Shown here in pieces: positions 2,050 to 64,000 of a DNA stretch of 64,000 nt. A program made the translations under genes and the position numbers. Source of the DNA: Bugula neritina. Taxonomy: Eukaryota; Animalia; Bryozoa. Within the stretch, counting starts at the first letter, position 1, and each line of letters begins with the position of its first letter. The stretch covers positions 124,001 through 188,000 of the forward strand of contig OZ037770.1 of assembly GCA_964035545.1 (NCBI GenBank), in the 5' to 3' direction. Under the pieces are notes generated by a model. That model was not told the origin of the DNA, made no database searches, and saw nothing but the letters and a program-made list of their open reading frames with translations.

Positions 2050-5000
2050 CTACCTTGCCCTCGCGGAAATTTGCTGCGGACCTTGAGGAGCTGCATTCAC
2101 AAGTGGCTTGTGGTAAGATGCGGTATTCTCTTGACTCGTAGCTACCGGAGGATTGTCCACTTCTAGTGCATCAGATTCAACATCCTCTCTAACAGAGACA
2201 GAGCTGTTCGTGTTGTGACTATACGGAGCAGTTTGCAGGTCTTCAGAGGAGACAATCCCCGCATACTCCACTCTACTAACCCTGCTAGTACGCCTGCTGC
2301 GGCTAGCCAGTGTACCGAGGTTGGCTATGTTGTTCTTTATGTAGTTGGTGCCCGTGACGGCACCATTGCCTGCTTTACTCACTGCACAGTTCAATGACTT
2401 GCTCTGAGCTTCACCTGTTTCCTTAGAAGACTTTACAGGGGACCTGTTTCTATACCCCCAACCTTGCTCCTGTGAACAACAGATCTACAGCTACAGCATT
2501 ACTATAGTATCTACTATATACTTACCTTACTATAGTATCTACTATATACTTACCTTACTATAGTATCTACTATATACTTACCTTACTATAGTATCTACTA
2601 TATACTTACCTTACTATAGTATCTACTATATACTTACCTTACTATAGTATCTACTATATACTTACTTAGTCCAATGAGGTAAGTATCAACTAGGTACTCA
2701 CTCTACTACGTACTTACTCTACTAGGTACTTACTCTACTAGGGACTTACTCTACTACGTACTTACTCTACTACGTACTTATTCTACTACGTACTTACTCT
2801 ACTAGAATGCTGACCAACTCTCACATTTCGACTCCTCACAGGTGACTGACTGGTCTTGTGTGGAGGAAGGGAAGTTTGAGCTGAGCCACCAGACGGCTTG
2901 TCACCACTGGGGTTAGACTGAGTTTCTAAACTATTGCTAATAGAGGTAGGCTGGTGAGCGGAAGCACTCGCAGACTTGGGGCAGGCATTGTACAGCATAT
3001 GGAAGGTTCCCAGGTTCTGTAGAGGTAGAAGGGGCTGGTTTTTCTTTGCTTTCTCAAAGCATTCCAACGCCAGATCTAAACATTATGGTAGGAAATGCTA
3101 CACTTTTCAGTATGCAACTTGAGAGTTGCCTTACTCTACATGTTAACTTTCTGTACAGTAATTTGGAGCAGATAACAGCAATTACCACAGGCCCAACTAA
3201 GGGTCAAAGTGGGTATTTACTATACCAGACTTACCAATAGTTCCAGCTAGAATGCCGGGTAAATTCTCTTTGAGTACTTCACAGTTTACGTGCATTGCAG
3301 GGTTTACATTGATCTCTATCAGCCAAATCTTCATATCGCTGTCTATCATGAAATCAAACCCGTAGATGTCAAACAAGCCTAGACGACTCTGAAGTTTATG
3401 CTTTACGCTGTTGAAGCAGTACTTCATGATTGCCTTTATCTGTTTCTACAACACAGCAAGAAAAGGTTATTTCTTCGACTAGCTGTTTGGTGAGAGAGTT
3501 ACAAAGTGTAGTATAGACTCTGATAGAGGATACGATATCAGCACACCTCAAAGTGGTTGAGCACCCAGTCTGTCTCTATGCCTTTCTCCTCCTCAACTGT
3601 TTCATTCACATACTGATTGAACTTCTCCATTGACCACACAGTGTCTTCCTTCATGTCTTTGTAATTCTCTACTTTCTTCTGCACATACTGTGAGTAGAAG
3701 TCAAATACCATTCGATATTGAAGCATCGGTTACCTACTCTATGAGTGAGTGAGTGAGTGAGTGAGTATTCAGTGAGAGAGTGAATGAGTGAGTGAGTATT
3801 CAGTGAGTGAATGAGTATTCAGTGAGAGTGAGTGAGTAAGTAAGTATTCAGTGAGAGTGAGTGAGTTAGTGAGTGATAATTGATCAGTAAAATGGTGCAA
3901 TTCAAGCTGCCAGTACTATTACCATGCTTACTGTATACAAGCTAAACATTGAGAGATGCATACAAACCTGATTGGTTAGATGAGTAGAAAGGTCAAGGCT
4001 ATCTAGATTATATTCCTCACACGTGACCCTGACATAACCTTTGTGATACAAGACAATGAACGGTAGAGTGCTGGGAATCATCATGTAAGCTCTGATATCA
4101 AATTTCTTCCTCTCCACGAGGAGGGGCTTCTCAATGTACCTCTGAACTATGAGAGGCATGAGTGGTTTGGTCCTCCTGGCCTGCTTCCTCTGCTCTCTGT
4201 CTGCCAGCATCTTATCTATCTGCTCCTGGGACCTGATCAGAAATATTCCTTTTCCTTGATTCAGTCCTGTTGGCTTGCAGATCCATATTTCTCCATCTGA
4301 AAATACGGTATACTATGTAGTGTGTACTGTATACTATGTAGTGTGTACTGTATACTATGTAGTGTGTACTGTATACCATGTAGTGTGTACTGTATACTAT
4401 GTAGTGTGTACTGTATACCATGTAGTGTGTACTGTATACTATGTAGTGTGTACTGTATACTATGTAGTGTGTACTGTATACTATGTAGTGTGTACTGTAT
4501 ACCATGTAGTGTGTACTGTATACCATGTAGTGTGTACTGTATATCATGTAGTATGTACTGTATACTATGTAGTGTGTACTGTATACCATGTAGTGTGTAC
4601 TGTATACTATGTAGTGTGTACTGTATACTATGTAGTGTGTACTGTATACCATGTAGTGTGTACTGTATACTATGTAGTGTGTACTGTATACTATGTAGTG
4701 TATACTGTATACCATGTAGTGTGTACTGTATACTATGTAGTGTGTACTGTATACCATGTAGTGTGTACTGTATACTATGTAGTGTGTACTGTATACTATG
4801 TAGTGTATACTGTATACCATGTAGTGTGTACTGTATACTATGTAGTGTGTACTGTATACCATGTAGTGTGTACTGTATACTATGTAGTGTGTACTGTATA
4901 CTATGTAGTGTATACTGTATACTATGTAGTGTGTACTGTATACCATGTAGTGTGTACTGTATACTATGTAGTGTGTACTGTACACTATGTAATACAAACC

Positions 5001-7156
5001 CTTGTAAACATCTAAAAAAGTTTCTCTGTCTTTCAGCTGATCAATTCTGTAGGTCTCAGGGACAAAGTCACTCATCTTCAGCTTTACGCGGTCCCCTTTG
5101 AGAGCCCCGACTACTCTGCTGTATTCACTGAGGCTATTATATAGCCCGAGTTTGTTGGTGAGTAAACTGCAGTTGGGTATTCGGTTTACCAGCTGTTCGC
5201 CATCTCTACAGTATGCAGTATATTCTATAGTATAGAGATAGCATGTGTATATATTCTAGGATATACAGTATATAAATAACATAGGAGTATATTCTAGGAT
5301 ATACAGTATAGAGATAACATAGGAGTATATTCTAGGATATACAGTGTATAAATAACATAGGAGTATATTCTAGGATATACAGTATATAAATAACATAGAA
5401 GTATATTCTAGGATATACAGTATATAAATAACATAGGAGTATATTCAAGCACCTGAAAGCACCGTAGTTCACCTGGCCATTCACTTCAATCCACTTGAGC
5501 TTCCAGTTGAAGTTCTGCTTGTCTGCAATTTTCTTCCAACCCAAAGAGTTTAAGTACGCATCAACACTAAATGAGTAGTAAAGAGTTATATAATATAATT
5601 TATGTAGAGTCATGTGCTATGTAGAGACATGTGCTATATAAAGTTATGTGCTATATAGGGTTATGTGCTATGTAGAGTCATGTGCTATATAGAGTTATGT
5701 GCTATGTAGAGTAATATAATATACATCACTTCCTGATATGCTACAAACTCAATGATCTATGTATTCTCAATAGAAAGATAGTGTATTAGAGTTTTTGGTC
5801 TTACATAGGGCCACCATTTCCCCCACAGATTTGGTAAGATGCCATGTTAGTTGGGAGACTCAACAGTTTTATCCGAGCATTGTGTTCTGCTTTACGCCTT
5901 CTTTTACGTCTTTTTTTAGGAGATGAATATTCTGAGAACTCAGCAACCTCTGTAAGTATTGCTAGTACTTGTAGCTCACACTGATTTCATCAAATTAGAA
6001 TTACAGTTCAACCTCGTAAAATCATCAAACATTGCGTGAGGTTGAATTCAAGTAATTAGTTTCAAAAGATCAGCTAGGACACTAAGTCAAAGTTGAGTCA
6101 AGCTCGTAACTATTCAAGTTGATTGCTAACTAAGCTGAATCTAGTCAAGTCCAAACAATATATTATTAATGTTGAGTTTGACAAAGACTTTACTTATTTT
6201 AATTAAATTTGAATTGATTTGCAATTATGTCTTTAATCAAGTCATTCGATGTCTTGCTCATTTACACATTGACATAAATTTAATAGAGAATAGTGCATCA
6301 ATTCAGAATAAAAAATATAAATTAAATTTAACTAGTACCGCCAGCTTGAAGTACTTGAAAATTTATACTTTAAGTTTTATTAATCATAAATTAAAATATA
6401 GCAACTATGATAGAATAAAATCATTTAATTTAATAGCTACTAAATCTTAATAAGCATTTAAGAATCATAGCATTAGTTTAAATAACATAGAAAAAAAACT
6501 TTCTTTGCCAGTTAATATTTAAATTTAATCCATATATTAAAATAATTCTCAAGACTTGCAGCAATTCAAGTCCAGTCAGTGAGTTACCAGCTTAACCATT
6601 TTAGCACGCTGATTTGGGCCCAAGTTTTTAATTAATTGAAACAGCCAATTCAACATCACTAAGATATTATATTGATTGAGACCTGGCAGTAACCGGCACT
6701 AAAACTAAAAGTCAAGACGGGCTCACAAAAATGGTTAAATCAGTGAGCAAAATCAAGATCCATAAACACAAAATGAAAATATCAATTACAAGAATAGCCG
6801 ATCTACTTGAGTTGCACAAAGCAGGGTCTAAGCTAACGTCATATGTTTGGTAGCAATACCGTTCACAATGACAAATCAATAACTTTAAGTTTATTTTAGT
6901 TTGAGTTTGTCAAAATGAAAATGTCAATCTCATTCACAATGACAATCACAATGCGAGTGATCACTAGCAGAATCAATAAACATCAGTATGATTGGGCTGG
7001 CAGTAAGCCTGTCGTAGACGTAATTACTGTTAACTTACCTGAGCAATATATTGACTCAATATTAGCAGTAGACTGATCCAAAAATATCTCTGCGGGAGTT
7101 TCAGCTTGTGCTCGATCTACCTCGTCTGCGGCGCATACACTAATACTTGTAGACAT
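2050..7156 (-). CDS. TTLL10: Tubulin polyglycylase TTLL10-like (TTL/ATP-grasp), multi-exon, about 653 aa
   Basis: Exons (minus strand, GT-AG, phases consistent): 7156-7039 ([15 protein letters not shown]..), 5949-5805 (..[10 protein letters not shown]), 5566-5453 (..WKLKWIE..YGAFR), 5205-5000 ([27 protein letters not shown]), 4296-3968 ([39 protein letters not shown]), 3687-3547 ([15 protein letters not shown]), 3445-3235 ([24 protein letters not shown]), 3075-2798, 2469-2050 (to TAG if the donor at 2053 is read through). GGNG, GEQL..IPN..LLT.K.GL, NQGKG and HLTNQ.QKK..TVW are TTLL10-type motifs. Confidence 0.9.
2498..2803. repeat. 28-bp and 16-bp intronic tandem repeats in TTLL10
   Basis: (TTACTATAGTATCTACTATATACTTACC)n followed by (TACTTACTCTACTASG)n; the latter includes the exon donor at 2797. 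Confidence 0.9.
4308..4990. repeat. 21-bp intronic minisatellite (GTATACYATGTAGTGTGTACT)n
   Basis: About 32 copies filling TTLL10 intron 4999-4297. Confidence 0.95.
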
Positions 7157-7404
7157 ATAATATTAATAATTATTATATAGTTCAATCAATATATTATTTT
7201 ATATTCACCAGACCAGCTGGCGTAGGTGACTGCTCACTAGAATCAGAGCACAAAATTTATCGGATTATCCAGTCAGTCACACTGCGATTGGCATGCACAA
7301 CCTACACTCCAGGCTACCAGGCCCAGTTCAGTGGTTGGATAAAACAGTCGTTGAGTATTGCCAACAGCGTGAGTATTCAACCTTCGTTTCACGCACGAGA
7401 GTAC

Positions 7405-7417
7405 GTTACCTAGCAAC
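7405..7417. promoter_or_regulatory. RFX X-box upstream of TTLL10
   Basis: GTTACCTAGCAAC matches the RFX palindromic consensus, about 250 bp upstream of the TTLL10 ATG; typical of ciliary genes. Confidence 0.65.
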
Positions 7418-8554
7418 CATTGATGTGTCTGGTAATCACCCTTGTTATTTTAAGGCATTGAACTGTAGAGGACTTGTTTGATAAACCTGCGTGTAATTTA
7501 TTTAGTGCTCCATTATGTATCAGTGGTGCAGCTGAATGCTAGAGTAACGAAAATAATTATAAAGTAAATGTGATAAACTCGATGCAACATATTTAGTAAA
7601 AACTGAAAAAATACTTCTATGTTTTGACTTTTGAAAATAAACATGGCCCATTAAAAACTCAGCCAAATTAGTATACTAATTACTATTACTGCATCTTATT
7701 AATAAAAAGTAAAAGCATAATTCAACTGTTATTTATTTATGATTGTATCAGTCTTGTGATGTATCTTCATGTCTATGAAACTGAAATTACTCTGTTGTGC
7801 ATAGTCCATGACGTTAACAGTGGTTAAAATCATTGAAATATAAATTTCAACACATGCAGTGGTTACAATGCTATGAAACCACAACCGTGAGAGACTATAG
7901 TTAAATGGAGCCTGCAGTTGAAGGTGGGCAGTTCTTAATTTTTATAAACCTACTATGTATGCCTACAAGTTTATAAACCTTCCTAATGCAACTCTGGCGC
8001 TGTGGGCGGAGCCTCAGACCACACCTAAATTCATTATATTATTTAACATGTTTTGCTGGCTGATTGGCTATATGTTGAGCTAGAGAGGAAAAATACGCCT
8101 AGAGATATCTGGTCCGTTATGTTTTTGTACCAAGTCATGATGCAAGTAGAGATATTACATTTCATATGTATTGTATACATATAAGAATATTTAACCAAAC
8201 AACATAGGATAAAATTAAATAAAGAATTGAGAAGAGCAGAGTGATTGTCACAAACTTTTCAATTCAAAAGTTCAACTGAGCATGAAGAGTGAGTACCAGT
8301 ACAGGTAAGTCTAGGAAAAAGGAATAATTTAATAATATATAGTACAATATAACAGTAATATAAAAAGAATATAATACAATAATAATATAGAAAGAATATG
8401 ATACAATAATAAAAGTGATATAATACTAATAGTTGTATGTAATAATGTAATGTAATAGTATTTAGCCAGCTAAATATTATAATATAACATTTATTGTTCT
8501 GAAATGATAAGTTTTGCAAAATAAAAAATTTTGCTGGGGACAAATATTTGTGTT

Positions 8555-11500
8555 TCATAAAATAATCTCTCTAGTCTGAGTTCCAACAGTACTCTCTCTA
8601 GTCTGAGTTCCAACAGTACTCTCTCTAGTCTGAGTTCCAACAGTACTCTCTCTAGTCTGAGTTCCAACAGTACTCTCTCTAGTCTGAGTTCCAACAGTAC
8701 TCTCTCTAGTCTGAGTTCCAACAGTACTCTCTCTAGTCTGAGTTCCAACAGTACTCTCTCTAGTCTGAGTTCCAACAGTACTCTCTCTAGTCTGAGTTCC
8801 AACAGTATTCTCTCTAGTCTGAGTTCCAACAGTACTCTCTCTAGTCTGAGTTTCAACAGTACTCTCTCTAGTCTGAGTTCCAACAGTACTCTCTCTAGTC
8901 TGAGTTCCAACAGTACTCTCTCTAGTCTGAGTTCCAACAGTACTCTCTCTAGTCTGAGTTCCAACAGTACTCTCTCTAGTCTGAGTTCCAACAGTACTCT
9001 CTCTAGTCTGAGTTCCAACAGTACTCTCTCTAGTCTGAGTTCCAACAGTATTCTCTCTAGTCTGAGTTCCAACAGTACTCTTTCTAGTCTGAGTTCCAAC
9101 AGTATTCTCTCTAGTCTGAGTTCCAACAGTATTCTCTCTAGTCTGAGTTCCAACAGTATTCTCTCTAGTCCGAGTTCCAACAGTATTCTCTCTAGTCTGA
9201 GTTCCATCACTAAACGCATGCTGAGCGGGCAGAGGCCAACCCTCATCTAATGGAAATAACAGTTACAATATACAGCATAATGCACAGAGAAAGTATAAAC
9301 TGCAGAAATATAAAGAAGCAGAAAGAGCAAGCTGCAGGATATACCTTCACTCTCAGTACCGCTGGCGTCTTCATCTGGTGGACAGGAAGTGCTTGTGTCT
9401 GTCTGTTCGGGTTTGTGGGTGAAGAATATTGATTTCTCGGAGGGAATGAAGTGATGAGTCAGTTTCCAAGGGTGTGCGTCGCAATGACTATAAATATAGA
9501 CATATTATATTACTATATTATCATATTACTATATTATTATATTACTGTATTATTGTATTACTATATTATTATATTACTATATTATTGTATTACTATATTA
9601 TTATATTACTATATTATTGTATTACTATATTATTATATTACTATATTACTATATTATTATATTACTATATTATTGTATTACTATATTATTGTATTACTAT
9701 ATTATTATATTACTATATTATTGTATTACTATATATATTATATTACTATATTATTGTATTACTATATTACTATATTATTATATTACTATATTATTATATT
9801 ACTATATTATTGTATTACTATATTATTATATTATTATATTATTATATTACTATATTATTATATTACTGTATTATTGTATTACTATATTATTATATTACTA
9901 TATTATTGTATTACTATATTATTATATTACTATATTACTATATTATTATATTACTATATTACTATATTATTATATTACTATATTATTGTATTACTATATT
10001 ATTGTATTACTATATTATTATATTACTATATTATTGTATTACTATATATATTATATTACTATATTATTGTATTACTATATTACTATATTATTATATTACT
10101 ATATTATTATATTACTATATTATTGTATTACTATATTATTATATTATTATATTACTATATTATTATATTACTGTATTATTGTATTACTATATTATTATGT
10201 TACTATATTATTGTATTACTACATTACTATATTATTATACTATTAAACATAGCCAACCTTTTGCACTCTCCACTCAGCCATGTGTCAATGGATTTGAAGA
10301 TGTAAGTTGGGGAATGATAACTCCTAGCTTCAAACTTGTAGCTCTTGTGTATCTCCACATGGCCACGCTGCCATCTGGCTCCTATAGTCTTCTCTCCTTC
10401 ACCCAACCAAATCTCAACGTGTACAATATCGTGTTTCTGTCTTTTACCTAGTTACAGTATTATAGTATATAGTATATAACATATAGTATAGAGTATATAG
10501 TAAGTAGCGGATATAGACTCACATCTAGGGTTGTAGTAAGTAGCGGATATAGACTCACATTTAGGGTTGTAGTAAGTAGCGGATACAGACTCACATTTAG
10601 GGTTGTAGTAAGTAGCGGATATGAACACCAGATCTCCTGGCAGCATGTCAGCTTCATGCTCCACTCTGATTGGCAGAGTGTCGTACTGGTAGGCTTGGTT
10701 CCACGGCCCAAACTCGAACCCAAAATCATCCTTTAGATCTCTAACTATTTTCCTGACAAGACCGCAGCAGTCAAGGAAGAGTTGAGAGTTATATTCAGCT
10801 TCTGAAGAGAAGACAATACACTAGTAGTTGTCCTCTCAATATATTGTATAGTCGGACAACTCTCAGCACACGAGTAGTTGTCCTCTCAACATACCGTATA
10901 GTAGGACAACTCTCAGCACACGAGTAGTTGTCCTCTCCACATACCGTATAGTAGGGCAACTCCCAGCATACTAGTAGTTGTCCTCTCAACATACTGTATA
11001 GCAGGACAACTCCCAGCACACGAGTAGTTGTCCTCTCAACATACTGTATAGCAGGACAACTCCCAGCACACTAGTAGTTGTCCTCTCAATATACCGTATA
11101 GTAGGACAACTCCCAGCACATATCACACTAGACTGCTAGAGTATCTCTTACCATCTTCACTCCAGTAACGTCTGGCGTAAGGAACACCAAAGTACTTCTT
11201 AGCCTGACCTACAAACTTCTCTCTCAACTTTTGTTTGTATTCTGCTGTGTGGGTGTCTCTTATTGCTGCTTCTCTTGACACTCTTGCTGTCTCTACTGCT
11301 GCCTATGAAACCAGAAAACTACCACTAGTAGGACTACAGTACACCTCCTCCAGTATACAATAATACACAATGGTACACAGGTGTATATTACTATTTCCAA
11401 CAGTGCACGTGTAAAAACCTTATATAACCTCAGAATTTACCAGGGTAGTCCAGGTAAAATATGTCGTAATAGAATGCCTCACCAACATGGCTTCATGGAA

Positions 11501-12509
11501 TCTATTACAGTCGCCAATCACTAGACTATAACAATCACCAACACTATAGGAGCTAACTAACCCAGTGGAATACTATAATACTTATGAGTATACTTGTATT
11601 ATAATACTTATGAGTATACTTGTATTATAATACTTATGAGTATACTTGTATTATAATACTTATGAGTATACTTGTATTATAATACTTATGAGTATACTTG
11701 TATTATAATACTTATGAGTATACTTGTATTATAATACTTATGAGTATACTTGTATTATAATACTTATGAGTATACTTGTAGTATAATACTTATGAGTATA
11801 CTTGTATTATAATACTTATGAGTATACTTGTATTATAATACTTATGAGTATACTTGTATTATAATACTTATGAGTATACTTGTATTATAATACTTATGAG
11901 TATACTTGTATTATAATACTTATGAGTATACTTGTATTATAATACTTATGAGTATACTTGTATTATAATACTTATGAGTATACTTGTATTATAATACTTA
12001 TGAGTATACTTGTATTATAATACTTATGAGTATACTTGTATTATAATACTTATGAGTATACTTGTATTATAATACCGGCTCAAAACTCACACGAATAAAA
12101 TCTAGAACAAAAGGTCGTGGAATCACGGAAAGCTTAAAATTGGTTCATCAAGTTGATTAATTGGATAATAATCTCCACATCTTTCTTTAAATCAAACAAT
12201 AGTCTGGCGTAGTGCGTGGGCCTTTATAAATCCCCCTCTAATACTTCTTTACCCCCCCCCCCCATTCCTAAAGCTAAAACACAGATCAGTGTACTGAAGG
12301 CACTAGCTCTAGTATATGGTATATAAAGTAATATCATATACAACACTTACAGTGAGATTGGTGTATTATTTAGTCTAGAACATGTAATATGGCATTCAGA
12401 ACATAATGTGTGACCTATGTAGTGCAGCAAATAAAGTATGCTTCAAGGGATAGACTACCATAGGTGTACTGTACTTAGCCACTGACATCTACAGCTGATA
12501 ACACACCAT

Positions 12510-12580
<71 letters not shown>

Positions 12581-15500
12581 TATATAACAAAGTGTAGAAG
12601 TCAGGGGGCAGTGAGTACTGACTTCTATACCCTGGAAAGTCTCTCAGCCTTCATCAATGTCAAACCATCTTGCCAACCTCCTGCTAACCCTATTCTGAGG
12701 ATCATTTACCCCTTTCTTGGAATAAAATCAGCTAATAAGGGAAGTGATGTTAATCCAAAGTTTAGTACAGTTTCGTATAGCTTCACCCAATTTGGCAACC
12801 AAAAGCTAGATAATTAAAACAACTCATTATATGATTTCGAAATATTTAGTCATAAGCTGTGAAACATTTTGCGGAAACATCTCAGCATTGCTTTTTGTGG
12901 AAAATTTCCACGTGAGCTAAAAATACCTTTTACCTATGACTTTCCATCATTTACCTAGTAGTTATAGTTAATCATTACCTAGTAGTTATACTTCATCATT
13001 ACCTAGCAGTTATACTTTATCATTACCTAGTAGTTATACTTTATTATTACCTAGTAGTTATACTTTATCATTACCTAGTAGTTATACTTCATCATTACCT
13101 AGTAGTTATACTTTATCAATACCTAGTAGTTATACTTTATCATTACCTAGTAGTTATAGTTTATCATTACCTAGTAGTTATAACATGTTTTACCCTAGTG
13201 TTGTCGAGGTGAGAAACTGTTGGGAGGATTTTACCCACATCCAATATGTTCTTCGAATTGAAAACAAGTTTAACCTCAAATAATTTGTGATGTATAAGCA
13301 GCAGTAAGGGGAAGGTTATTGCTTATAGTAACCTAGCAACAGACGTCACTCCTCTGGAAATACTCACCACCAGGCAGGTTCAGTTGAAGCAGCAACATGT
13401 GTTATTAAGGGCCGACTTATCCAAAATCTTCCAGAGTTGGCAGCAAAAGTAGATTATATTTGCAGGATAACTTTACCTGACAGTATTAGAGAATGGCAAA
13501 TCTTATACAACCAGGTAAAGCTACATGCAAACTTCAGTGAACATCACCTTGAATAGAACTCCCTCCACAACACCTAGCCCATTCCTCCACAACATCCTCC
13601 CCTCCCCCCACAACATCCCACGAGACTGAGAGGGCCACAGCTAAGACTATACCTTTTTAGTCTACTACACGTTTAAAAAAAACAAAACATTTACTGTCTG
13701 CTAATGTTTGATCTAACTTTTTAGCCAATAAAACTCAGTGAGAAATACTGCTTTATAGATCAGCCTACTAAGTAAAGATAATAACTTTTCTAATCAGCAA
13801 AAGCACTGGCATTGGTAAGGAATACTAGTGCAGCGATGCATCTCTACTACTATATAACATTGTGCAAGACTGTGTAATACTGTGTAATACTGTAACATTA
13901 CAAGTACAGTAGTGATTCATTTGAATAACCGGATGAAGACTACATCAGAAAATAGACCCGTTGGAAGCCATCTAATTTCAAAGCTGTAAAGTGATGCTCT
14001 CATAACTATTAGTTTACTACGTGATAGAATATCAAGCGTTAAGAGCAGCAGCAGCCACTCGTATTAATAGATGACCTCAGTGTGACCCCTGCCAGCACTA
14101 CACAACCCTTCAATACGAAGGCAGACTGGAATCACACAGCGTATGCATGTTTAACTATTATAAGCCGAGTTAGTGGTACTGTAATACCTGTCCAAATTGC
14201 CAGGTTGCCAACCCACGCACAAGATCAAGTATAATCCACAAGGTGTAACCGACTTTAATGTAAATGTGAAAATGAGATAGAAGAAAGCCATCACCTTGGT
14301 GCAGTTCCCATAGCTGCACGGGCTGAGAGTGTCAACATAGCTTCCTGTTTTGCCATCCAGTATTGCGTGATGATGCAATCATACGGAGGCACACCCGATG
14401 ATATATCAGTTAATGTCACGCGCCAAAACTTGACGCAAATCATAACACCTGCCGGCAAGAAAATGAGGAACTACCAAACTACACAGCCAACAGCACCCCT
14501 GCTCTGCGGCACCCCTGCTCTGCGGCACCCCTGCTCTGCGGCACCCCTGCTCTGCGGCACCCCTGCTCTGCGGCACCCCTGCTCTGCGGCACCCCTGCTC
14601 TGCGGCACTCAAGATAGCCAAGCAAGACTTTTAATTAGTTTTACAGCTATTCAGCTTTAAAGAGAGATTAACACAGTAATGGGCAGCTGAAGGCTGTTAT
14701 AATTAAGTCTGACCAATAATTTATTTTGGAGGCAGTGTAGGTGGAGAGTGAGAGTAGGTGGAGGGAGTGTAGGTGGAGAGAGAGTGTAGGTGGAGAGGGA
14801 GTAGGTGGAGAGAGAGTGTAGGTGGAGAGGGAGTAGGTGGAGGCAGTGTAGATGGAGAGAGAGTAGGTGGAGGGAGTGTAGGTGGAGAGAGAGAGCAGGT
14901 GGAGAGGGAGTAGGTGGAGGCAGTGTAGATGGAGAGAGAGTAGGTGGAGGGAGAGTAGATGGAGAGAGTGTAGGTGGAGGGAGAGTAGGTAGAGAGAGAG
15001 AGAAGGTGGAAAGAGAGAAGGTGGAGAGAGAGAGTAGGTGGAGAGAGTGTAGATGGAGAGAGAGAGTAGGTGGAGAGAGTGTAGATGGAGAGAGAGAGTA
15101 GGTGGAGAGAGAGAGTAGGTGGAAAGAGAGAAGGTGGAGAGAGAGTGTAGATGAAGAGGGTGTGGGCTGAGTGGGTGTAGAGGTGTGGTCACCAGCATAA
15201 GAGGAGAGGTGTAGAGGTGTGGTCACTAGTATAATAAGGGTGAATAGCATAGACATTGTCAGTTTGTCCTACTTTAACGTTCATTCTATTTGTTCAGGTA
15301 AATGGAGAGCCAAACAAATATCCAAACTTTTTCAATTGTGAAGAGACCACTGCCTGGGGGAATAGTTTAGTATAAAGAGAAGAAGCAACGACTACCTTAA
15401 GCACTACCAAATGAAGAAAGACAGCAGCTGAGGCAGCAATTAAACAGCTAGTCCAGCAGAAATATAACTTCTAAATTATTTTAGGAGTCTTGATAGCTGA

Positions 15501-18500
15501 GAGTGAATAGCTTAGGAAATAGTTAGGAATCAATGGCTGGTTTAAGAGTACTTAATGATAGACCGCATGGAAATACTGGTCAATGATATATGATGCAATA
15601 GCTGAGGGTAACGACTCTGTAGTTATGTAATCAGCCAGACTGGCATTGCATAACTACAAATGATAGATTGTGTCTAATACCTTCAATCTAGAACCCTATT
15701 GATCTATTGAACAGTGGTATCACTATAATAGTATACTGTAATACTACACACTGCAATACTACTAACACTGCAATACTACTAACACTGTAATACTAACACT
15801 GTAATACTACTAACACTGTAATACTAACACTGTAATAGTAACACTGTAATACTGACACTGTAATACTACACACTGTAATACTAATAGTATGAGAGTGCCA
15901 TCAGTACATCAATAACTCTGCTATGTTGAAAAGTTAAACATCACTATGGTTAGAAATGCTACCTGTAGCTAGTGACAAAAGAAGAGCATACTCATACAGT
16001 TACACAGTGTACATAGTGTACATACTCATAGTGTACATACTCATAGTGATAGTGTACATACTCATAGTGTACATAGTGATAGTGTACATACTCATAGTGA
16101 TGGTATACATACTCATAGTGTACATAGTATACATACTTGTAGTGTACATAGTGTACATACTCACAGTGTACATTGTGTACATAGTGATAGTGTACATACT
16201 CATGGCATACATATACACTTACAGTCATAGCTTACATGGTACACAGGCAAAGTAACCTTGACAGCCAAGGCTAAACTAAACATTTACATACTTATTATTA
16301 TTTAGTTATTACTTAATTTAGTAATGCATAATGACTTAGTTTATGGAACAACATCTCATCATGAAAACAGAAAAGCCAAAGGCATGTAATATAATTATTA
16401 TTTTATACCTAGCAATAAAATAATAGATTTAATACTTACAATTATGCAACAACAGTAAATGTGTGCTCTATGAGTATATCTATCAGTTGTTACTATAATG
16501 AGTATCAACTTAAAGTAAAAGATGATTTAAGATCTACATTTTTACTCAATAAATGAGCAAACCTTGAGGAAGAGAAAGCTAGACAAGCTGTGATATTTTA
16601 CCAACAAAAAGTAACCAGTGACTGGACTAGTATTAGTATTAGTACTATAACCTACCAGCAATGGATTAGTAATGAATTTATACACTATCCCTCTGTGAAC
16701 ACCACTTAGAGTTTAATTAAGAAAATCTGAACAACTATTTCTATTATATGTACAAATCAGAACCAAACAAGTTTATTCAAACTTATAGTAATCAATACTG
16801 GAGGTAAAATCACTAACAATACAAGTTTAGTCATAGCACTGGAATGCCTCAAAATACAAGTAAATTGCAACACCTGGACTGTCAATAGGTTACCTGTCCG
16901 CCATTACAGCCATCACAGATGACAATGTAAGGGCATCGGCACACCCCAGCCCTTAACAATCATTGAAATGTTACTCAATTATCCTTACTAAGGTAGAAAA
17001 TTTCAAACAAAGTGAACGTATCACCGGCTAACCTACTTCTATCCTGAATGCGTCGTTGAAGCGCCTCCACAAAGAGCTACCAACATCCTTTCCAATGAAC
17101 TATATCCACTAAGGCGCCAACCAAACTACTAGCTGTAAATAAGCTGTCCAATATACGAATTCTGATTGGACAACAATAGTGAGCTGAGAGCAGAATAATT
17201 GCATCATTCATCAGGTGGAGAAAATACGTAGCTACATATCCTAACTGAAACAAAAAGGAGGGGGCGGCCTAACCCACCCACAACCGACTCACTGGTAGGT
17301 AGGTTTACAGTAACGCCACTATGATTCAGACATGTATGTCATCGTCAGTAAAAACAGTGCAACTTTAAACTGCCGGACTTCGTACCCTTTCATATTCAGC
17401 CAGTTGTGAGTCTCTCTTATACCATGTATTCTATTCCAGGTATCTAGCAGGTTTCAGTTTGGTTAGTGTGTCCCGTAGCAAGCTATAACACTTGACTGCT
17501 GATACAGCAGTCTAGTCAGTAGAAGTGCTGAAATTATCTCTTAGTAACCACACATTGTAGTGGGAGCAGGCATTGTAGTAGGAGCAGGCATTGTAGTAGG
17601 AGCAGCGTAGGTACGATTGCACCCAGCAGCCGCCATTGTTAGCTTAACCTGTTTGTGTAGAGAACAAAGAAGAAGAAAACCACCATATCAGTTAAGCATA
17701 GAGGTGAAGTAGAGTTCACGAGCCTTAACTACATTATAAGAGGAGGCAGCAAACAATGCAATCCAATATTACTGGAATGAAAGGATAAACTTAGCAAATT
17801 ACTTTACTCCAGCATCTCTGCTTTCAATGCTTTTTTCAATTATAATATTTCCATTGTAATAATTGGTCGAGGAAACAGAAAAGAATCTATAAAGAGGTGG
17901 TCAGCCGACCCTGATCTGTTACAGCCAAACCTAATCAGTTTTACAGCCACTAAACAGCTAGTGCTTATAGCTGCTAAATATTTCTTTTACAGCGAATAGC
18001 CATCGTCAGTTTGTTGGTTCTTAGAATCCAGATGATTGAGCAATGTAGACGATACAAGCAAGGGAGGGTCTAGACATGGCAACTCCGCATATTGAATACA
18101 CTGAAAACTCGGGTTACACAACCTACCTGTTGTAAAAAACAAGTCAACACAAAGCCAGATGATTTCTATTGAAGATATGAACATATATATGCACTCATTA
18201 ATCATTAGCCCACGCATTGCACTGCATCAATTAACCTGATTCACTGTTTATGAGGCTTGAAAAGAACTGGGTATTAATCCAGTGATATTGCTAGCCCCAA
18301 TATTAGACTGGGAACTGTTGGTTGCAAAGATGTAGAGGCTATAAAGTGCGGCTAGAACTAATGCTATTTGAAAATATTGCAGCCGTACCTCACACAGCAC
18401 TCTTAGGGGCTGCAATGGAGAAATTTTAATAGCCTAAATCCTTTAACTTTGTTGATAAATTTTGGTTCAGGCAAAGATTCACATTAGTGGGAAAATAACT

Positions 18501-21500
18501 TCTTTTGCTATATTTTTTATCTAGAACACAGGCTTTTCTAAATCTTTCTATTACTGCACCTATCTCACACACCAGGAATAATTTCTGTAATTTATCTTTT
18601 AGCTTTGGAATTTACTAAAATAATTTAACTTAACAGGTAGGAAAACCTAAAAACAAGGACATTGATACCCATTATAGATAGTTGGAGAGGACAGCCCAAG
18701 TGTATATTATAGAAGACTGTTAGTCCAGAGGCTAAGATGTAAATTAGATGGGAGTGGCTGATGCATAGCTGATATTACACTGTGCAGTGATACTGAGTGA
18801 TGCAGCATTTCTTTACTCTACTTGTAGGAACTGATGATGTGAGTGGGCTAATGAATACTGTAGCTATAGAATGGAAGATGGTTCAACTAGTTCAACAGTG
18901 AGTCACAGACTAAATGGAGGCGCTAAGCTGGCTGGCTACTCTCTCTGGTCATTGAAATCCGGCCAAGAGTAAACAAAGCATCTCTATGCTGATAAGCTAT
19001 TATTAGAAACAAAAAAATTGGCGGTAAGCTATGCTTTCATGAGCTGAACAACTCAAGCAATGACCTCAACACTAGTGAAACCGGTGGTTGATTGGTACAT
19101 AACTGGGCTATGATGCAATAGGATGCCACCCAATAGAGATAACTGATAAACATGTGCCCTTACATGAAGGGTATTAATAGCCCACAGAGCTACGGGCTGT
19201 TGGTTATGTGAATACTTGTGGTAAGCACACGTGGTCACATCTCTAGATGGAATTATTCCAGTATGACATCACAACAGACACTAATTTAATTAGATAATTG
19301 TAATGAGTTGGAGCTCAGCTGCATCAACAAAAACGTGCAGTACAACCACCTTTATTCCACATTGAATAACAAGTTCACAGCTAAACAACATCCCATGCTA
19401 TGAAGATGATGACAAACAAAGTCAGACAATGATTTTACATCTGGCACTGTTAGAAGAGAACTAGAGAAACAAACAGAGAAGTAGCATTACAAGCAGCAGT
19501 TTATTTAGTCTATGAATCCCATAATTAGCATGGCATGGCAGAGCATGGCACAGCAGGTTGTTGCTCAACTTCAGAGTATTGCAAAACAAGATGGCTGATG
19601 AGAACTGCTACAACAAGCTTTCGATCTAGAAAATTATAAAAAAAAGGTTGATGGGTTAATGAAACTAAGAAGAGCAAGTGAGTGAACAAAGCTGGCAGCT
19701 GAGTGTCATTTCATTGTTGCTTATCGCTGTAATTGCCAATAGATTGAGGCATATGAACCAGGATGTGTAAGGACTACTAGTGTAATGCTTGTACTAGCTT
19801 AGTGTAATATTATATGAACATATGCAGGTGGCAGCCATGTTTTATACAGGCTGCACGTGTACAGCTATAAAGACCAGCTTGTCTTGACTATATATAACAT
19901 TGCACATGATAATATGGTAGAACAAATGCTTCAGGGTTATTGCACTTTATGGTATATGCTAATATATTATTTCACTTCATGGTATATGCTAATATATTAT
20001 TTCATTATGGAAGCAGCTGCATACAATACAACAAGATAAAGTATTACTCATATACGCTACAAGCCCCACCCATTTACTGGCGCATATCATTGCTCATACA
20101 TTTATAACAAGAAACTTACCTTTCATTTAGTTGAATTAATAACTAATATTTAAAAATCAAGGAACTTGCTAGCAAAAGTAAAGAATTGAAACCATATTTA
20201 GTTTGGTTCATTGCTAGAATTTCAGTAGGTTTTTAGGTTAAATAAACAAAAATTGAATGACACCAAGGCAATGGCCATTATTTTAGTCAGGCTATTACAT
20301 CTACAATAAATTATTTTTCTTAAACTAGCTTAGAGACCAAAAAGCAGAAACTGAAGAGATAAACTTAATATTGGCCAAAATAAAGCCAATTAATCATGGC
20401 TTGACCTAGTTTTTGTAAGTTCTTTATCCTCAAAACACCTTTTTAACATTATAAACAAATAGAACTTCCAGTTGTGTCTCTAATCCACGACCTCTTGAAG
20501 GTCAACCAGACACAAGGTCGTATGAAGAGTGCTAGAGGCTAAACAGGACACTTGAAGCATCTCAACAGATGTGTGCCATTAATTCTATTGGTGAACTTGG
20601 TAACCATACAGCAAGCAAGTATAACAAGAAGATAAGTAAATACCTCGATGGAAAATAATACCATAATAAGCTCAATTTGACATTTTTTTGCTATATAAAT
20701 GCTAAGTTTGTACTAGTACAATGGCCGCAACAATGCGGATACCATTTGATTACCATTCTGACAGCAGTATAATCAGGATAATATAAAATTTGACATTTCA
20801 GGAGAAAACAAGACATTGGAGTTGTATGTTGCTACAGAATTTATTACCTAGATAACATAATATGCTAATCATATACTTTATATGCAACCATAAATATTAT
20901 ACATGCTGAGAAATAAGCAGAAACTTGGGGAGACTTCATTAGGAGAGCAATTCAGAAGAAGAGAAGACAACTTCATAGTATATCACAATATTATAGGGCA
21001 TCACAAGAATAGCAGCTCGTTCTACCATTACATGCTGTTTCCTAAACTTCTTATGACATCACCAGTCATACCTGCACTTGTTGGCACTAGAAATCATAAA
21101 TATTATGGTAATTTTACTTCATTTAGTACAGATTAGGATAAGTTTAGGAACCAAAAAGAAAGATTCAAAATTCTTGAAAATTTGCTATTTGGGATATTTT
21201 TATGTGGTGATTTTAAATATGTATGGCTTATATTTTGACTATATCAGATGAAGACATTGGTGATACAGTTTGTATCTTATTTGAAAGATTAAAAACTGTA
21301 CCAGCATTTGTAGATTATAAAATAAACTTCACAAAACTATATAGAATAGAGTGGTTTTGATTTTTCAATACAACTCACCAATAGTAATGCAAAAATCATC
21401 ACCATATCCTGTGTTTTTTGACTAAAAATTTATGAAAAACAAATGCAAAAATGTAGCAGCTTGATAAAGTCTGATAATCTAGATTGATTTGTTAAAATTT

Positions 21501-22401
21501 CATTAGTTAAAGGCAAAATGATATATATTAGCAGCTAGAGTTCAATAAAGTAGGCAACATTAATAAATTTATTGTGTGCTAAATAAATGAAGCATGTTTT
21601 ATACTACAAAAACTGCATGGCATAATAATAATAATAATAATAAATATATATTATATAACTTAACAATCTAAATTGAATATATTTTTAAACTCCGCAGTAA
21701 TAATTGTAACAAATAAATTTTACTGTGGAAAGAAAATGTTTAGTCTGTAATAAAGGACATAAACCATAAATTATGATTAATTGTAATATAATAAGTTATA
21801 ATTAATTTAAATAGAATAAATTACAATTAATTTTAATAGAATAAATTACAATTTATTAACATATGGAATAAAATACAATTTAATTATCTAATAGCTGTCA
21901 GCTGATTGTATAATTAACAAGTAACCAATCACTTACCCTTCGGAGAACTGTACACTCGGTCATCAGTGACGTGGGTAGACAATTTTCTGCTCAGCTTGTT
22001 AGACTACTCGTCTATAGCTGGTAGACTATGTTGCCTTGTGTGGGGGAGTCACCGATTAATAATACAAACATACAAACCGCGATTTTCTACGACTCTTTGA
22101 ACTCGACAAATATTTATTTTAACACACCGTAGCATTTCTACACGATATTCTAAATGGTAAAAAATATAGCGTCTGTCAACACTATATCAAGACAGGGTGT
22201 TACAATCAAACAACAAGGTGATATAAGGTGAAGTTCTGTGCCAATTATGTAACTGATAACTATAACTATAACTAAAACTTATATTACCTGTCGCCTCTTT
22301 TTGTAGTCCAAAAACGACTGCTGCAGGGAAGTTTGTTGAGGGTTGTTCGCTCTGCTCTCATCAAAAGGCACAACAAAACCAAAATCTCCAGGACTATCCA
22401 T
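8555..22401 (-). CDS. NlpC/P60 (papain-like cysteine peptidase fold) protein with C-terminal TQT repeat array, about 498 aa
   Basis: Exons: 22401-22288 (MDSPGDFGFVVPFDE..SLQQSFLDYKKRRQ, phase 0; least certain), 11302-11152 (..LREKFVGQAKKYFGVPYARRYWSED), 10801-10595 (LFLDCCGLVRKIV..NQAYQYDTLP..LPGDLVFIS), 10447-10258 (HDIVHVEIWLGEGEKTIGARW..IDTWLSGECK), 9487-9345 (SHCDAHPW..), 9246-8555 (DEGWPLP..(ESTVGTQTR)n..IIL*). The pattern G-x-PY, DC-x-GLV, PGDLVF, HV-x-I-x-x-G..I-x-A is the canonical NlpC/P60 signature with catalytic Cys and His. Confidence 0.8.
8567..9205 (-). repeat. 27-bp tandem repeat, 24 units; in the spliced frame encodes (E-S/N-T-V-G-T-Q-T-R)n
   Basis: Minus-strand unit GAGAGTACTGTTGGAACTCAGACTAGA. 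The frame is fixed by the phase-1 splice from 9345 to 9246; stop TGA at 8557-8555 and AATAAA at 8495-8490. Confidence 0.9.
9503..10240. repeat. AT-rich degenerate (TATTACTATATTAT)n intronic repeat
   Basis: Fills intron 10257-9488; source of the Y/I/L-rich ORFs. Confidence 0.95.
10820..11120. repeat. 46-bp intronic tandem repeat, about 6 copies
   Basis: Unit CACGAGTAGTTGTCCTCTCAACATACCGTATAGTAGGACAACTCYCAG-like, with an internal inverted repeat (AGTTGTCC..GGACAACT). Confidence 0.9.
11575..12075. repeat. 26-bp homogeneous minisatellite (TATAATACTTATGAGTATACTTGTAT)n
   Basis: About 19 near-identical copies. Confidence 0.95.
12631..12705 (-). CDS. Alternative 5' coding exon of the NlpC/P60 gene (MILRIGLAGGWQDGLTLMKAERLSR)
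   Basis: Open 75-nt frame ending at an AGG|gtatag donor in phase 0, compatible with the acceptor at 11302; internal AG acceptors at 12694 (phase 2) and 12680 (phase 1). Confidence 0.55.
12945..13182. repeat. 23-bp minisatellite (CATTACCTAGTAGTTATACTTTAT)-like
   Basis: About 10 copies. Confidence 0.9.
13328..13340. promoter_or_regulatory. RFX X-box at an internal promoter of the NlpC/P60 gene
   Basis: GTAACCTAGCAAC, about 90 bp upstream of candidate first exon 13240-13194; adjacent CRE-like GACGTCA. Confidence 0.55.
14494..15160. repeat. 16-bp GC-rich repeat (GCACCCCTGCTCTGCG)x7 and GA-rich (GTAGGTGGAGAGAGA)n tract
   Basis: Two arrays at 14494-14608 and 14727-15160. Confidence 0.9.
17590..19600 (+). 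mobile_element. Highly decayed non-LTR retrotransposon (LINE) reverse-transcriptase remnant
   Basis: Broken motifs resembling F.DLEKAF (about 18515-18540), R.A.V (about 18688) and YADD-like LYADKLLLE (18983-19009), in the expected order, with many stops and frameshifts. A possible APE remnant (LRVLND) at about 15540. Confidence 0.35.
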
Positions 22402-26553: not shown

Positions 26554-29221
26554 ATGCCTAAAACAAAGGGATATTGTCGGCCAATCTTTGAGTTCTTTGT
26601 TGTGTCGGGACTGGAGAATGGCAAAGAGTTGGTGTGTTTTGACGTCAACTCGTCATCTGATGCCGAGACAGCAGACTCAGGTCTATACTTTATGTTGTCT
26701 TGAGTCATCAGTATTCTCTGCTTGAGTCATCAGTATTCTCTGCTTCATAAACTAGAAATCTTCTCAACATAATAGTCACTCTGGAAATAACAAATACTCT
26801 TTGATGTTTTGTTAAAGAATAAGCAAGTGTTTAGTGAGTTGATGTTGAGTGACTTAGTTAACATTACCACTGAGTCCTTCCTCTTTCAGACCTCACAAGT
26901 CTAGTCTCTCCTCTCCAGCAAACTTACCAGGCGTCACTGCTCTCCAGCTACCCCCTCAAAGACCCTCACGGCAAGCTAGATCCTCAGGCTTTGACTGCAG
27001 TAAGTCACAATTCTTCATTACTATATATATATATAGTAATAGTACTCTATTACTATATATAGTAATGATACTCTATTACTATATATAGTAATGATACTCT
27101 ATTACTATGTATATTGTATAGTAATGATACTCTATTACTATGTATAGTAATGATACTCTATTACTATATATAGTAATGATACTCTATTACTATGTATAGT
27201 AATGATACTCTATTACTGTGCATAGTAATGATACTGTAGGAGTTGTTTACTGCTGAAGATATTCTCCAGTCAAATGTTTGCTCAGCCTGCAGGCAGTTTA
27301 TTGATTGAATGTTTCAAGTCTTTAGCAAATTAGCTAAATTACCATACTACTTGGGCTTTTACTGCCAAATCTATGCTTACACTTGCAAGTGCTTACTCCG
27401 TACTACAGTTATATACTCTATATTACAGTTATATACTCTATATTACAGTTATATACTCTATATTACAGTTATATACTCTATATTACAGTTATATACTCTA
27501 TATTACAGTTATATACTCTATATTACAGTTGTATACTCTATATTACAGTTATGTACTCTATATTACAATTATATACTCTATATTACAGTTATATACTCTA
27601 TATTACAGTTACATACTCTATATTACAGTTATGTACTCTATATTACAGTTACATACTCTATATTACAGTTATGTACTCTATATTACAATTATATACTCTA
27701 TATTACAGTTATGTACTCTATATTACAGTTATATACTCTATATTACAGTTATATACTCTATATTACAGTTATGTACTCTATATTACAGTTATATACTCTA
27801 TATTACAGTTATGTACTCTATATTACAGTTATGTACTCTATATTACAGTTATATACTCTATATTACAGTTATATACTCTATACTACAGTTACACACTCTA
27901 TATTACAGTTACATACTCTATATTACAGTTATACACTCTATATTACAGTTATATACTCTATACTACAGTTATACACTCTATATTACAGTTATACACTCTA
28001 TATTACAATTATATACTCTATATTACAGTTATATACTCTATATTACAGTTATATACTCTATATTACAGTTATATACTCTATATTACAGTTATATACTCTA
28101 TATTACAGTTATATACTCTATATTACAGTTATACACTCTATATTACAGTTATGTACTCTATATTACAGTTATATACTCTATATTACAGTTATGTACTCTA
28201 TATTACAGTTATATACTCTCTATATTACTAGTATATACTCTATATTACAGTTATATACTCTATATTACAGTTATATACTCTATATTACAGTTATATACTC
28301 TATATTACAGTTATATACTCTATATTACAGTTATGTACTCTATATTACAGTTATATACTCTATATTACAGTTATGTACTCTATATTACAGTTATATACTC
28401 TATATTACAGTTATGTACTCTATATTACAGTTATATACTCTATATTACAGTTATATACTCTATATTACAGCTGTGTTTCCCTCATGGAGTATCTCTATAT
28501 GAAGAGATACCTGACCAGCCACTCACTTTCCACCCATTCATCATAACCAGAGAAGATGGTTCTAAGGTTCACGCCGCATCTCTCTCCTTCTATGAGCAGG
28601 TAACTCCTAGTATAACCTTCACCCTGTCTCTGTATAACCTACACCCTGTCTCTGTATAACCTTCACCTTGTCTCTGTATAACTTACACCTTGTCTCTGTA
28701 TAACCTACACCCTGTCTCTGTATAACCTTCACCTTGTCTCTGTATAACCTACACCTTGTCTCTGTATAACCAGGTTGCTGGCACTATCTAAACACCGAGG
28801 AAATTTATTCAAGCAATCAAAAGCTACTCTCTCCCTTTCAATAGACCATTAACTGATCAGTGAACTATGCAGGCAACACTAGCCAATATTGTTTAGTTAC
28901 TTTCCTCTTCCTACATACTTAATATAAACACGTGTTACATGTATGTATATCCAGGATATGGTGACATCACCACTACATTGCATCAACTACTCTCACCTTA
29001 AGGTCACTGCTGCCTGGGGGTCAACTCTCAAATGTCAGATTGAGTTATAAATTATTGGCATCAGAAGTGTGAGCTTACTAAATCTCCTCTCTATCACAGT
29101 ATTGTATCATGTCATCTCTCTCCCCCCTTCTCCTTCTCTCCCCTTCTCTCCCCCTCTCTCCCCCTCTCTCCCCCTCTCTCCCCCTCTCTCCCCCTCTCTC
29201 CCCCTCTCTCCCCCTCTCTCC

Positions 29222-29252
<31 letters not shown>

Positions 29253-29302
29253 CCTCTCTCCCTCTCTCCCTCTCTCTCTCTCTCTCTCTCCCTCTCTCCC
29301 CC

Positions 29303-29344
<42 letters not shown>

Positions 29345-34546: not shown

Positions 34547-34582
<36 letters not shown>

Positions 34583-34583
34583 G

Positions 34584-34651
<68 letters not shown>

Positions 34652-58200: not shown

Positions 58201-58500
58201 GTGAATGTATATACACATCCCTCTAAGATGCTCCTGAGAGTGTATTAGCAAGTGCTCTAAGGTGTGAGCAAGTGTTCTAAGGTGTGAGCAAGTGTCATCA
58301 CTGTCTCCTTGACAACCACAACCAGTGCTCTCCTCTACTCTCTATTATATCAGTAAACTATCACTACCATGCAATATAATTATCTACCAGTAAGTAAGTC
58401 AACATAAATAAGAGTTGTGAGTATTTAGAGCACTTCAATTAGTGATAAGAAAGTATTAAGATGTCTACTCCTCACTCTAGCCCTTGCCCTCATAACTTAT
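55270..58500. repeat. Left arm of large inverted duplication
   Basis: Reverse complement of about 60740-64000 throughout: the window end matches 55270, and ORF pairs 57396-57683/61557-61844 and 57826-58017/61223-61414 mirror each other. High but imperfect identity. Confidence 0.95.
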
Positions 58501-63700: not shown

Positions 63701-64000
63701 ATTATTCATGTTCAGCGAATTCCTAATAAAATTAGTTTGTATGAAAGGAAAAGTTAGAGTAGCCATTTTGAGTCAACATAAATCAGTGAGTGAATAAAAG
63801 AGATGAACTGAGTTTGTTTGCTTTTCTTCATTGCTCTTTTGTTAAATGTAAATTAGCCATAATGGAGGTGCTAAAGACTTGAAAACTTCAAAAGTATTTG
63901 TTTTAGACTGGAATTCTGAAAGACAATTGGTAAAAGGGATGCTATAGTATATAATGTGTTTGTTATATTGGTAGAGTGTAGAGTGGATAAACTTAGTATT
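60740..64000. repeat. Right arm of large inverted duplication (continues beyond the window)
   Basis: Reverse complement of 55270-58500; the match is still unbroken at base 64000. Confidence 0.95.

What the first reader, a model, noticed from the sequence alone, without database searches (positions are those of the whole stretch)
2050..22401. NlpC/P60 cysteine-peptidase gene tandem to, and splice-compatible with, tubulin polyglycylase TTLL10: candidate glycylation writer/eraser module
Seen: an intact NlpC/P60 domain (GVPY, DCCGLV, PGDLVF, HVEIWLG..IGA) lies immediately upstream of TTLL10 on the same strand. Its exon ending at 9345 (phase 1) can splice in frame to TTLL10 exon 2 at 5949 (phase 1). 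The locus could therefore make three products: peptidase plus TQT tail, stand-alone TTLL10 from ATG 7156, and a peptidase-TTLL10 fusion. Both units have RFX X-boxes. Established: NlpC/P60 enzymes often cleave gamma-glutamyl (isopeptide-like) or amide bonds; tubulin glycylation is built on glutamate gamma-carboxyls; vasohibins show that Cys-His proteases edit tubulin tails; an animal tubulin deglycylase is not well established. Inference: this may be a ciliary deglycylase or chain-editing enzyme coupled to the elongating glycylase.
Basis: partly seen in the sequence, partly recalled or inferred. Interest (0 to 1): 0.9.

Follow-up and report, generated by a model that had tools for sequence, protein, structure and literature searches.

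The report
Peptidase anciently fused to tubulin polyglycylase
A cysteine-peptidase gene next to the enzyme that adds glycine chains to ciliary tubulin (TTLL10) turns out to be one half of an ancient two-enzyme fusion found from ciliates to reptiles but not found in mammals or birds, which makes it a concrete, testable candidate for the still-unidentified enzyme that removes those glycine chains.

Summary
The NlpC/P60 (papain-like) domain is real by fold (Z 12.8), single-copy, and its Cys/His/Glu are invariant in 293/293 homologs. In 128 of those 293 it is fused N-terminally to a TTL ligase. All fused ligases sampled form one clade with vertebrate TTLL10 (SH-aLRT 100). Fusions occur in sponges, cnidarians, spiralians, echinoderms, sharks to reptiles, a choanoflagellate, an ichthyosporean, ciliates (Tetrahymena thermophila XP_001014103) and a jakobid, including single ORFs on run contigs, so fusion is probably ancestral. 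None of 29 bird or 36 mammal TTLL10 proteins has it. In this genome the pair looks split: spliced RNA contigs start TTLL10 at about 7562 and join 7039>5949; no 9345>5949 fusion was seen. The TQT tail is species-specific. Best reading (about 45%): a writer-eraser pair in which the peptidase trims or removes tubulin glycine chains; glutathionylspermidine synthetase/amidase is the architectural precedent. Substrate is unproven. 2025-2026 papers still call the deglycylase unidentified; no paper on this fusion was found, but Iyer 2009 could not be read.

The parts
22288..22401 (-). Peptidase exon 1 (ATG 22401); encodes start of the conserved basic N-terminal helix (LQxxFxxF/Y motif)
   Evidence: Motif and 38-aa spacing to LRxKF match homologs; no RNA test
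11152..11302 (-). Peptidase exon with LRxKF and GVPY
   Evidence: E 7.6e-11
10595..10801 (-). Peptidase exon with DCC (predicted catalytic Cys codon 10769-10767), WNQAYQYD, PGDLVF
   Evidence: (PF00877 E 0.009)
10258..10447 (-). Peptidase exon with HVE (His codon 10421-10419, Glu 10415-10413), GARW, SIDTWL
   Evidence: E 9e-34
9345..9487 (-). Peptidase exon with C-x3-C-x2-H-x-W (possible metal site), KSIF and acidic tail; ends phase 1
8555..9246 (-). Probable terminal exon: 27-bp minisatellite read as 23 TQT motifs, stop 8557-8555; species-specific
   Evidence: contig 8337-8560 in run X2
13328..13340 (.). RFX X-box-like motif in peptidase intron 1, 2 kb upstream of exon 11302; possible alternative promoter for exon ending 12631
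   Evidence: same 13-mer 408 nt upstream of the Adineta vaga stand-alone gene
7039..7562 (-). TTLL10 first exon (5' UTR with X-box-like motif 7405-7417, ATG 7156)
   Evidence: RNA contigs X2 and X3, joint 7039>5949
2050..5949 (-). TTLL10 exons 5949-5805, 5566-5453, 5205-5000, 4296-3968, 3687-3547, 3445-3235, 3075-2798, 2469-2050 (653 aa with exon 1)
   Evidence: PF03133 E 7e-27; first three joints; TTLL10 clade

Best explanation
TTLL10 was ancestrally a two-enzyme protein: an N-terminal NlpC/P60 cysteine hydrolase joined by an acidic flexible linker to the ATP-grasp glycine elongase. The hydrolase most likely acts on the product of the glycylation pathway, either trimming Gly-Gly bonds or cutting the gamma-Glu-Gly branch, through a Cys acyl-enzyme with His as general base. 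A basic N-terminal helix could hold it on acidic tubulin tails. In this animal the two halves have become separate tandem transcription units, so writer and eraser can be regulated apart. Shown: fold, invariant catalytic residues, fusion distribution, TTLL10 clade, separate TTLL10 mRNA here. Inferred: catalytic activity, substrate, tubulin binding, ciliary location.
For: Fusion in 128/293 homologs, always peptidase first. 57 TTL domains (fused forms plus vertebrate TTLL10) form one clade against 32 other TTLs, SH-aLRT 100, quick tree. Fusions in Stygiella, Tetrahymena, Protocruzia, Salpingoeca kvevrii, Chromosphaera and most animal phyla sampled, also as single ORFs on run contigs and intronless DNA, with linkers as short as 11-15 aa. 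Cys/His/Glu intact in 127/127 fused and 166/166 unfused. NlpC/P60 fold, Z 12.8, including gamma-D-glutamyl endopeptidases. Gsp and trypanothione synthetase/amidase (N-terminal CHAP amidase that hydrolyses the product of its C-terminal synthetase; PMC6272389) appear at Z 5.1-5.5. No signal-peptide-like start in 153/155; N-terminal helix net charge +5. Deglycylase unidentified (PMC12340829; PMC13425397).
Against: No activity data. Mammals and birds lack the domain in all 65 TTLL10 proteins checked, yet mammals polyglycylate (bull sperm, PMC11244163), and TTLL10 self-limits without an eraser (PMC12340829). The position where canonical NlpC/P60 enzymes carry the third triad residue appears to be Gly here (motif-based inference); Glu two residues after His may replace it but geometry was not checked. 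Unlinked stand-alone copies exist (Ciona, Adineta, S. rosetta, Oopsacas, Dimorphilus). The fused model shows no clear interdomain packing (pTM 0.68, low-confidence linker). Z of 5 to Gsp amidase is only a shared fold.
Confidence: 0.45

Rival explanations
1. The domain is an active tubulin-tail editor but acts on glutamate side chains or clips the tail (deglutamylase or debranching enzyme), freeing or tuning sites for glycylation.
For: NlpC/P60 enzymes prefer gamma-Glu at the cleaved bond (established; fold neighbours); glutamylation recruits TTLL10 (PMC12340829); basic helix and invariant Arg near the site suit acidic substrates.
Against: CCP and TMCP deglutamylases already exist (PMC11244163, PMC4230590); the domain was found fused only to TTLL10-clade ligases, never to a glutamylase.
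Confidence: 0.2
2. The domain is an active hydrolase or transacylase tied to TTLL10 but with another target: non-tubulin glycylated proteins (such as NAP1), TTLL10 itself (self-processing or removal of autoglycylation), or mis-ligated residues (proofreading).
For: TTLL10 modifies NAP1 (title of ref. 111 in PMC5666887); long variable acidic linker (median 10 D/E in 30 aa after the domain) could itself be a modification or cleavage site; repeated fission.
Against: Retention with perfect catalytic conservation after unlinking from TTLL10 argues against a purely cis role.
Confidence: 0.22
3. The domain is a non-catalytic reader that binds glycylated or glutamylated tails and targets or restrains the ligase.
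For: Canonical third triad residue seems absent; catalytically dead NlpC/P60 binders exist (RipD).
Against: Cys, His and Glu invariant in 293/293 sequences over the breadth of eukaryotes.
Confidence: 0.08
4. It is a bacteria-derived peptidoglycan hydrolase (as in Trichomonas NlpC/P60) whose position beside TTLL10 is accidental or an annotation merge.
For: Closest solved folds are cell-wall DL-endopeptidases.
Against: Fusion on single ORFs in run contigs and intronless genomes across supergroups; no secretion signal; no close prokaryotic relative found; tree broadly follows species.
Confidence: 0.05

Closest known systems
TTLL10 polyglycylase (TTL family, PF03133)
   Same: C-terminal gene is a TTLL10 ortholog: one clade with vertebrate TTLL10, 45% identical to a rodent TTLL10 over the TTL domain, ATP-grasp motifs present.
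   Different: Studied mammalian forms lack the N-terminal peptidase; most other eukaryotic TTLL10s sampled carry it.
NlpC/P60 (MEROPS C40, PF00877) DL-endopeptidases such as MepS/Spr, RipA/B, YkfC, Trichomonas NlpC
   Same: Same fold (Z 12.8), G-x-PY, DC and His motifs.
   Different: Only 14-26% identical; below Pfam cut-off in most members; DCC instead of DCS, invariant HVE, extra basic N-terminal helix, C-terminal Cys/His cluster; no signal peptide; eukaryote-wide and fused to a TTL ligase.
Glutathionylspermidine and trypanothione synthetase/amidase
   Same: N-terminal Cys-His papain-like amidase plus C-terminal ATP-dependent amide ligase with opposing activities in one chain (PMC6272389; PMC2784880).
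   Different: CHAP rather than P60-type domain (Z about 5), small-molecule substrate, separate origin.
Vasohibins and predicted ciliary transglutaminase-like peptidases (PMC3495828)
   Same: Cys-His papain-like enzymes that edit, or were proposed to edit, tubulin tails; pairing of ATP-grasp ligase with a reversing peptidase was proposed there for bacterial systems.
   Different: Different family (transglutaminase-like), not fused to a TTL ligase; that paper does not mention this domain.
Giardia 14-3-3 deglycylases (metallopeptidases, Lalle 2011 as cited in PMC4230590 and PMC3962474)
   Same: The only described deglycylases.
   Different: Metallo-enzymes of an unrelated family acting on 14-3-3.

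Membership tests
NlpC/P60 superfamily | Papain-like NlpC/P60 fold | tested here: met
   Model of Acanthaster ortholog pLDDT 88.8; Foldseek and VIA top hits all NlpC/P60, Z up to 12.8
NlpC/P60 superfamily | Catalytic Cys and His, with conserved Tyr (GxPY) and Asp before Cys | tested here: met
NlpC/P60 superfamily | Pfam PF00877 gathering score (23 bits) | tested here: inconclusive
   Window exon 16.4 bits; full homologs 15.9-23.6 bits
C40 peptidoglycan DL-endopeptidases | Third polar triad residue on the strand after the catalytic His | tested here: inconclusive
   Motif position holds Gly/Ala in 294/294; invariant Glu at His+2 may substitute; coordinates of the model not available
C40 peptidoglycan DL-endopeptidases | Export signal or cell-wall targeting domain | tested here: not met
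   Hydrophobic N-terminus in 2/155; no SH3b or LysM found by Pfam in the homologs scanned
C40 peptidoglycan DL-endopeptidases | Hydrolysis of gamma-D-Glu-diaminoacid bonds | not testable with these tools
   needs assay
TTLL10 | TTL domain grouping with vertebrate TTLL10 apart from other TTLLs | tested here: met
   SH-aLRT 100, quick tree, 32 unlabelled outgroup TTLs including TTLL3-like motif sequences
TTLL10 | Glycine-chain elongase activity | not testable with these tools
   ATP-grasp motifs present; activity not assayed
Synthetase/amidase bifunctional enzymes (Gsp type) | Papain-like amidase N-terminal to an ATP-dependent ligase in one chain | tested here: met
   128/128 fused homologs; in this genome the two appear separately transcribed
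Synthetase/amidase bifunctional enzymes (Gsp type) | Amidase hydrolyses the bond made by the ligase | not testable with these tools
   needs assay

The most novel reading that the evidence does not exclude
This domain is the long-sought tubulin deglycylase, present as a writer-eraser fusion with TTLL10 since early eukaryotes and missed because mammals and birds lost it.
Probability: 0.4. Interest if true: 0.92.

Novelty: new variant of a known kind. Interest (0 to 1): 0.78.

Why it matters
Glycylation is the tubulin-code mark whose removing enzyme is still described as unidentified in 2025-2026 papers. This gives a specific candidate, specific residues to mutate, and a fused gene in a genetically tractable model (Tetrahymena thermophila XP_001014103). 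If true it supplies a reagent to strip glycine chains, changes the picture of TTLL10 from elongase to bifunctional editor in most ciliated eukaryotes, and suggests mammals and birds lost reversibility of the mark. Even if the substrate is different, a near-invariant uncharacterised cysteine hydrolase bound to TTLL10 across eukaryotes is a gap in cilia biology.

Tried and rejected
Database searches used single exons by reference or proteins returned by tools; the joined spliced model was not sent to any search tool and was used only in local scripts built from window.fa (comparison with fetched proteins, trees), as were joined exon hits of other TTL genes used as outgroups. PDB sequence search with the family profile gave no peptidase hit, only TTL chains. 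Prokaryote genome scan found no relative (finds close relatives only). Literature searches for TTLL10 + NlpC, NlpC P60 + tubulin tyrosine ligase, and the Tetrahymena accessions gave nothing. Iyer et al. 2009 (PMC3268129) and Anantharaman and Aravind 2003 (PMC151301) were not held; the former covers ATP-grasp/peptidase pairs and may mention this architecture. Rejected: annotation merge as the source of fusions; a conserved TQT tail (no array in 369 homologs); the 7-exon peptidase model as main form (wrong motif spacing); recent bacterial transfer.
Full report
Locus. The window is from a 216-Mb, 321-contig animal assembly with minisatellite-filled introns. The TTLL10 tree places it among spiralians; a bryozoan is my guess from memory, not tested. 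Two minus-strand genes lie in tandem. The upstream gene encodes an NlpC/P60-like domain in exons 11302-11152, 10801-10595, 10447-10258 and 9487-9345, single-copy in the genome. Exon 22401-22288 carries a motif conserved in homologs (LQxxFxxF/Y); spliced straight to 11302 it gives the 38-residue spacing found in 101 of 173 homologs, while adding two candidate exons (22003-21937, 12683-12631) gives 78. The downstream gene is a 653-aa TTL-family protein.

Transcripts. The 9345 donor and 5949 acceptor are both phase 1 and give an open fusion frame, but that is a one-in-three coincidence by itself. Two runs of one study hold spliced contigs of 2799 and 3069 nt that begin at 7562 and 7542 and join 7039>5949, 5805>5566 and 5453>5205 at GT-AG sites, with no loose end at 5949. 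TTLL10 therefore has its own first exon here. One contig at 8337-8560 lies just after the stop of the TQT-repeat exon (stop 8557-8555, AATAAA-type signals at 8495 and 8333), consistent with the peptidase ending there. X-box-like motifs are at 7405-7417 (inside the TTLL10 5' UTR) and 13328-13340 (peptidase intron 1); enrichment is modest.

Family. One 68-aa exon finds 427 cluster representatives at up to 78% identity. Of 293 fetched homologs with most of the domain, 128 also carry a TTL domain, always C-terminal. Named fusions: sponges (Oscarella, Dysidea, Sycon), cnidarians (Nematostella, Stylophora, Hydractinia), echinoderms, Ptychodera, Lingula, Owenia, Capitella, nemerteans, molluscs, lamprey, sharks, sturgeon, Polypterus, Megalops, coelacanth, axolotl, caecilian, turtles, crocodile, lizards; Salpingoeca kvevrii, Chromosphaera, Tetrahymena thermophila (XP_001014103), Protocruzia and the jakobid Stygiella. 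Fusions also occur as single ORFs on run contigs and on intronless genomic DNA, with linkers down to 11-15 aa, so they are not annotation merges. The nearest relative of both window proteins in both trees is such a fused ORF (P0212). All 57 TTL domains sampled from fused proteins and vertebrate TTLL10 form one clade against 32 other TTL sequences taken from this assembly (SH-aLRT 100, quick tree, outgroups not individually named). Unfused copies are scattered over the peptidase tree: some are split annotations or short isoforms, others are genes with no TTL within 10 kb (Ciona, Adineta, S. rosetta, Oopsacas, Dimorphilus). The Adineta gene has the same X-box 13-mer 408 nt upstream. The simplest history is an ancestral fusion with repeated fission, this locus being a recent one. 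None of 29 bird and 36 mammal TTLL10 proteins has the domain and no stand-alone bird or mammal copy appeared in any list, but the lists are truncated, so loss is likely, not proven.

Enzyme. A model of the sea-star domain (pLDDT 88.8) matches NlpC/P60 peptidases (Foldseek E 3e-5; VIA Z 12.8), and Atlas clusters of this family are 100% eukaryotic. The first Cys of DCC, the His and the Glu of HVE are present in 127/127 fused and 166/166 unfused sequences that cover them. By motif, the usual third triad position is Gly; the invariant Glu may replace it (inference). A His plus C-x3-C-x2-H cluster is about 90% conserved and may bind metal (inference). There is no signal peptide, the N-terminal helix is basic and the segment after the domain acidic. 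A fused protist protein folds as two confident domains with a low-confidence linker (pTM 0.68).

Mechanism. TTLL3/8 attach the first Gly to a Glu gamma-carboxyl and TTLL10 extends the chain (PMC5666887). A papain-like amidase fused N-terminally to an ATP-dependent amide ligase has a known precedent: glutathionylspermidine synthetase/amidase hydrolyses what it makes (PMC6272389), and these amidases appear among the weaker fold neighbours (Z 5.1-5.5). I therefore favour hydrolysis of Gly-Gly or gamma-Glu-Gly bonds on tubulin tails (0.45). Rivals are a Glu-directed editor (0.2), another TTLL10-related target or self-processing (0.22), a catalytically silent reader (0.08), and an unrelated cell-wall hydrolase (0.05). 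Against the favoured reading: no activity data, mammals polyglycylate without it (PMC11244163), and TTLL10 is self-limiting in vitro (PMC12340829).

Prior knowledge. Papers of 2014, 2017, 2024, 2025 and 2026 state that no tubulin deglycylase is known. Searches for this architecture found no paper, though automatic database names already label some TTLL10s as NlpC/P60 domain-containing. Zhang and Aravind 2012 proposed other (transglutaminase-like) ciliary peptidases for this role and the general ligase-plus-peptidase logic (PMC3495828). Iyer et al. 2009 could not be read and may mention the fusion.

Verdict. Real, conserved and apparently uncharacterised: a new variant of the ligase/amidase pairing and a strong, directly testable deglycylase candidate. 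The splice compatibility noticed here is best seen as a relic of the ancestral fused gene. Interest 0.78.

Noticed in passing
window 8555-9246 (-): 27-bp minisatellite read as 23 TQT motifs resembling LC8/DYNLL-binding sites; no such array in 369 homologs, so a lineage-specific tail.
   Followed up: partly
G000 small contigs (e.g. C41, C66, C111, C260, C273, C310): About 30 intronless TTL genes with in-frame TAA/TAG: the assembly contains a ciliate co-biont or contaminant.
   Followed up: partly
window 55270-58486 and 60759-64000: Inverted duplicate of at least 3.2 kb, 93.7% identical; each copy holds a similar 95-aa ORF without a Pfam match.
   Followed up: no
window 35997-37187 (-): Intronless 396-aa ORF nested antisense in an intron of the DENN-domain gene; no Pfam match; an X-box-like motif lies at 34049-34062.
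   Followed up: partly
window about 27300-44300 (+): Multi-exon DENN-domain gene (PF02141 E 1.5e-30), resembling DENND5 by eye.
   Followed up: partly
window 51446-52420 (-): Two-exon gene with a bHLH-like segment resembling achaete-scute by eye; not confirmed by Pfam on the first exon alone.
   Followed up: no
window 21937-22003 and 12631-12683 (-): Two splice-compatible candidate exons in peptidase intron 1 with no homolog support; the second could be an alternative first exon downstream of the 13340 X-box.
   Followed up: partly
Atlas rank 1: A family cluster whose commonest recorded taxon is Fornicata (4 records), the group that includes the heavily polyglycylating Giardia; not examined.
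   Followed up: no
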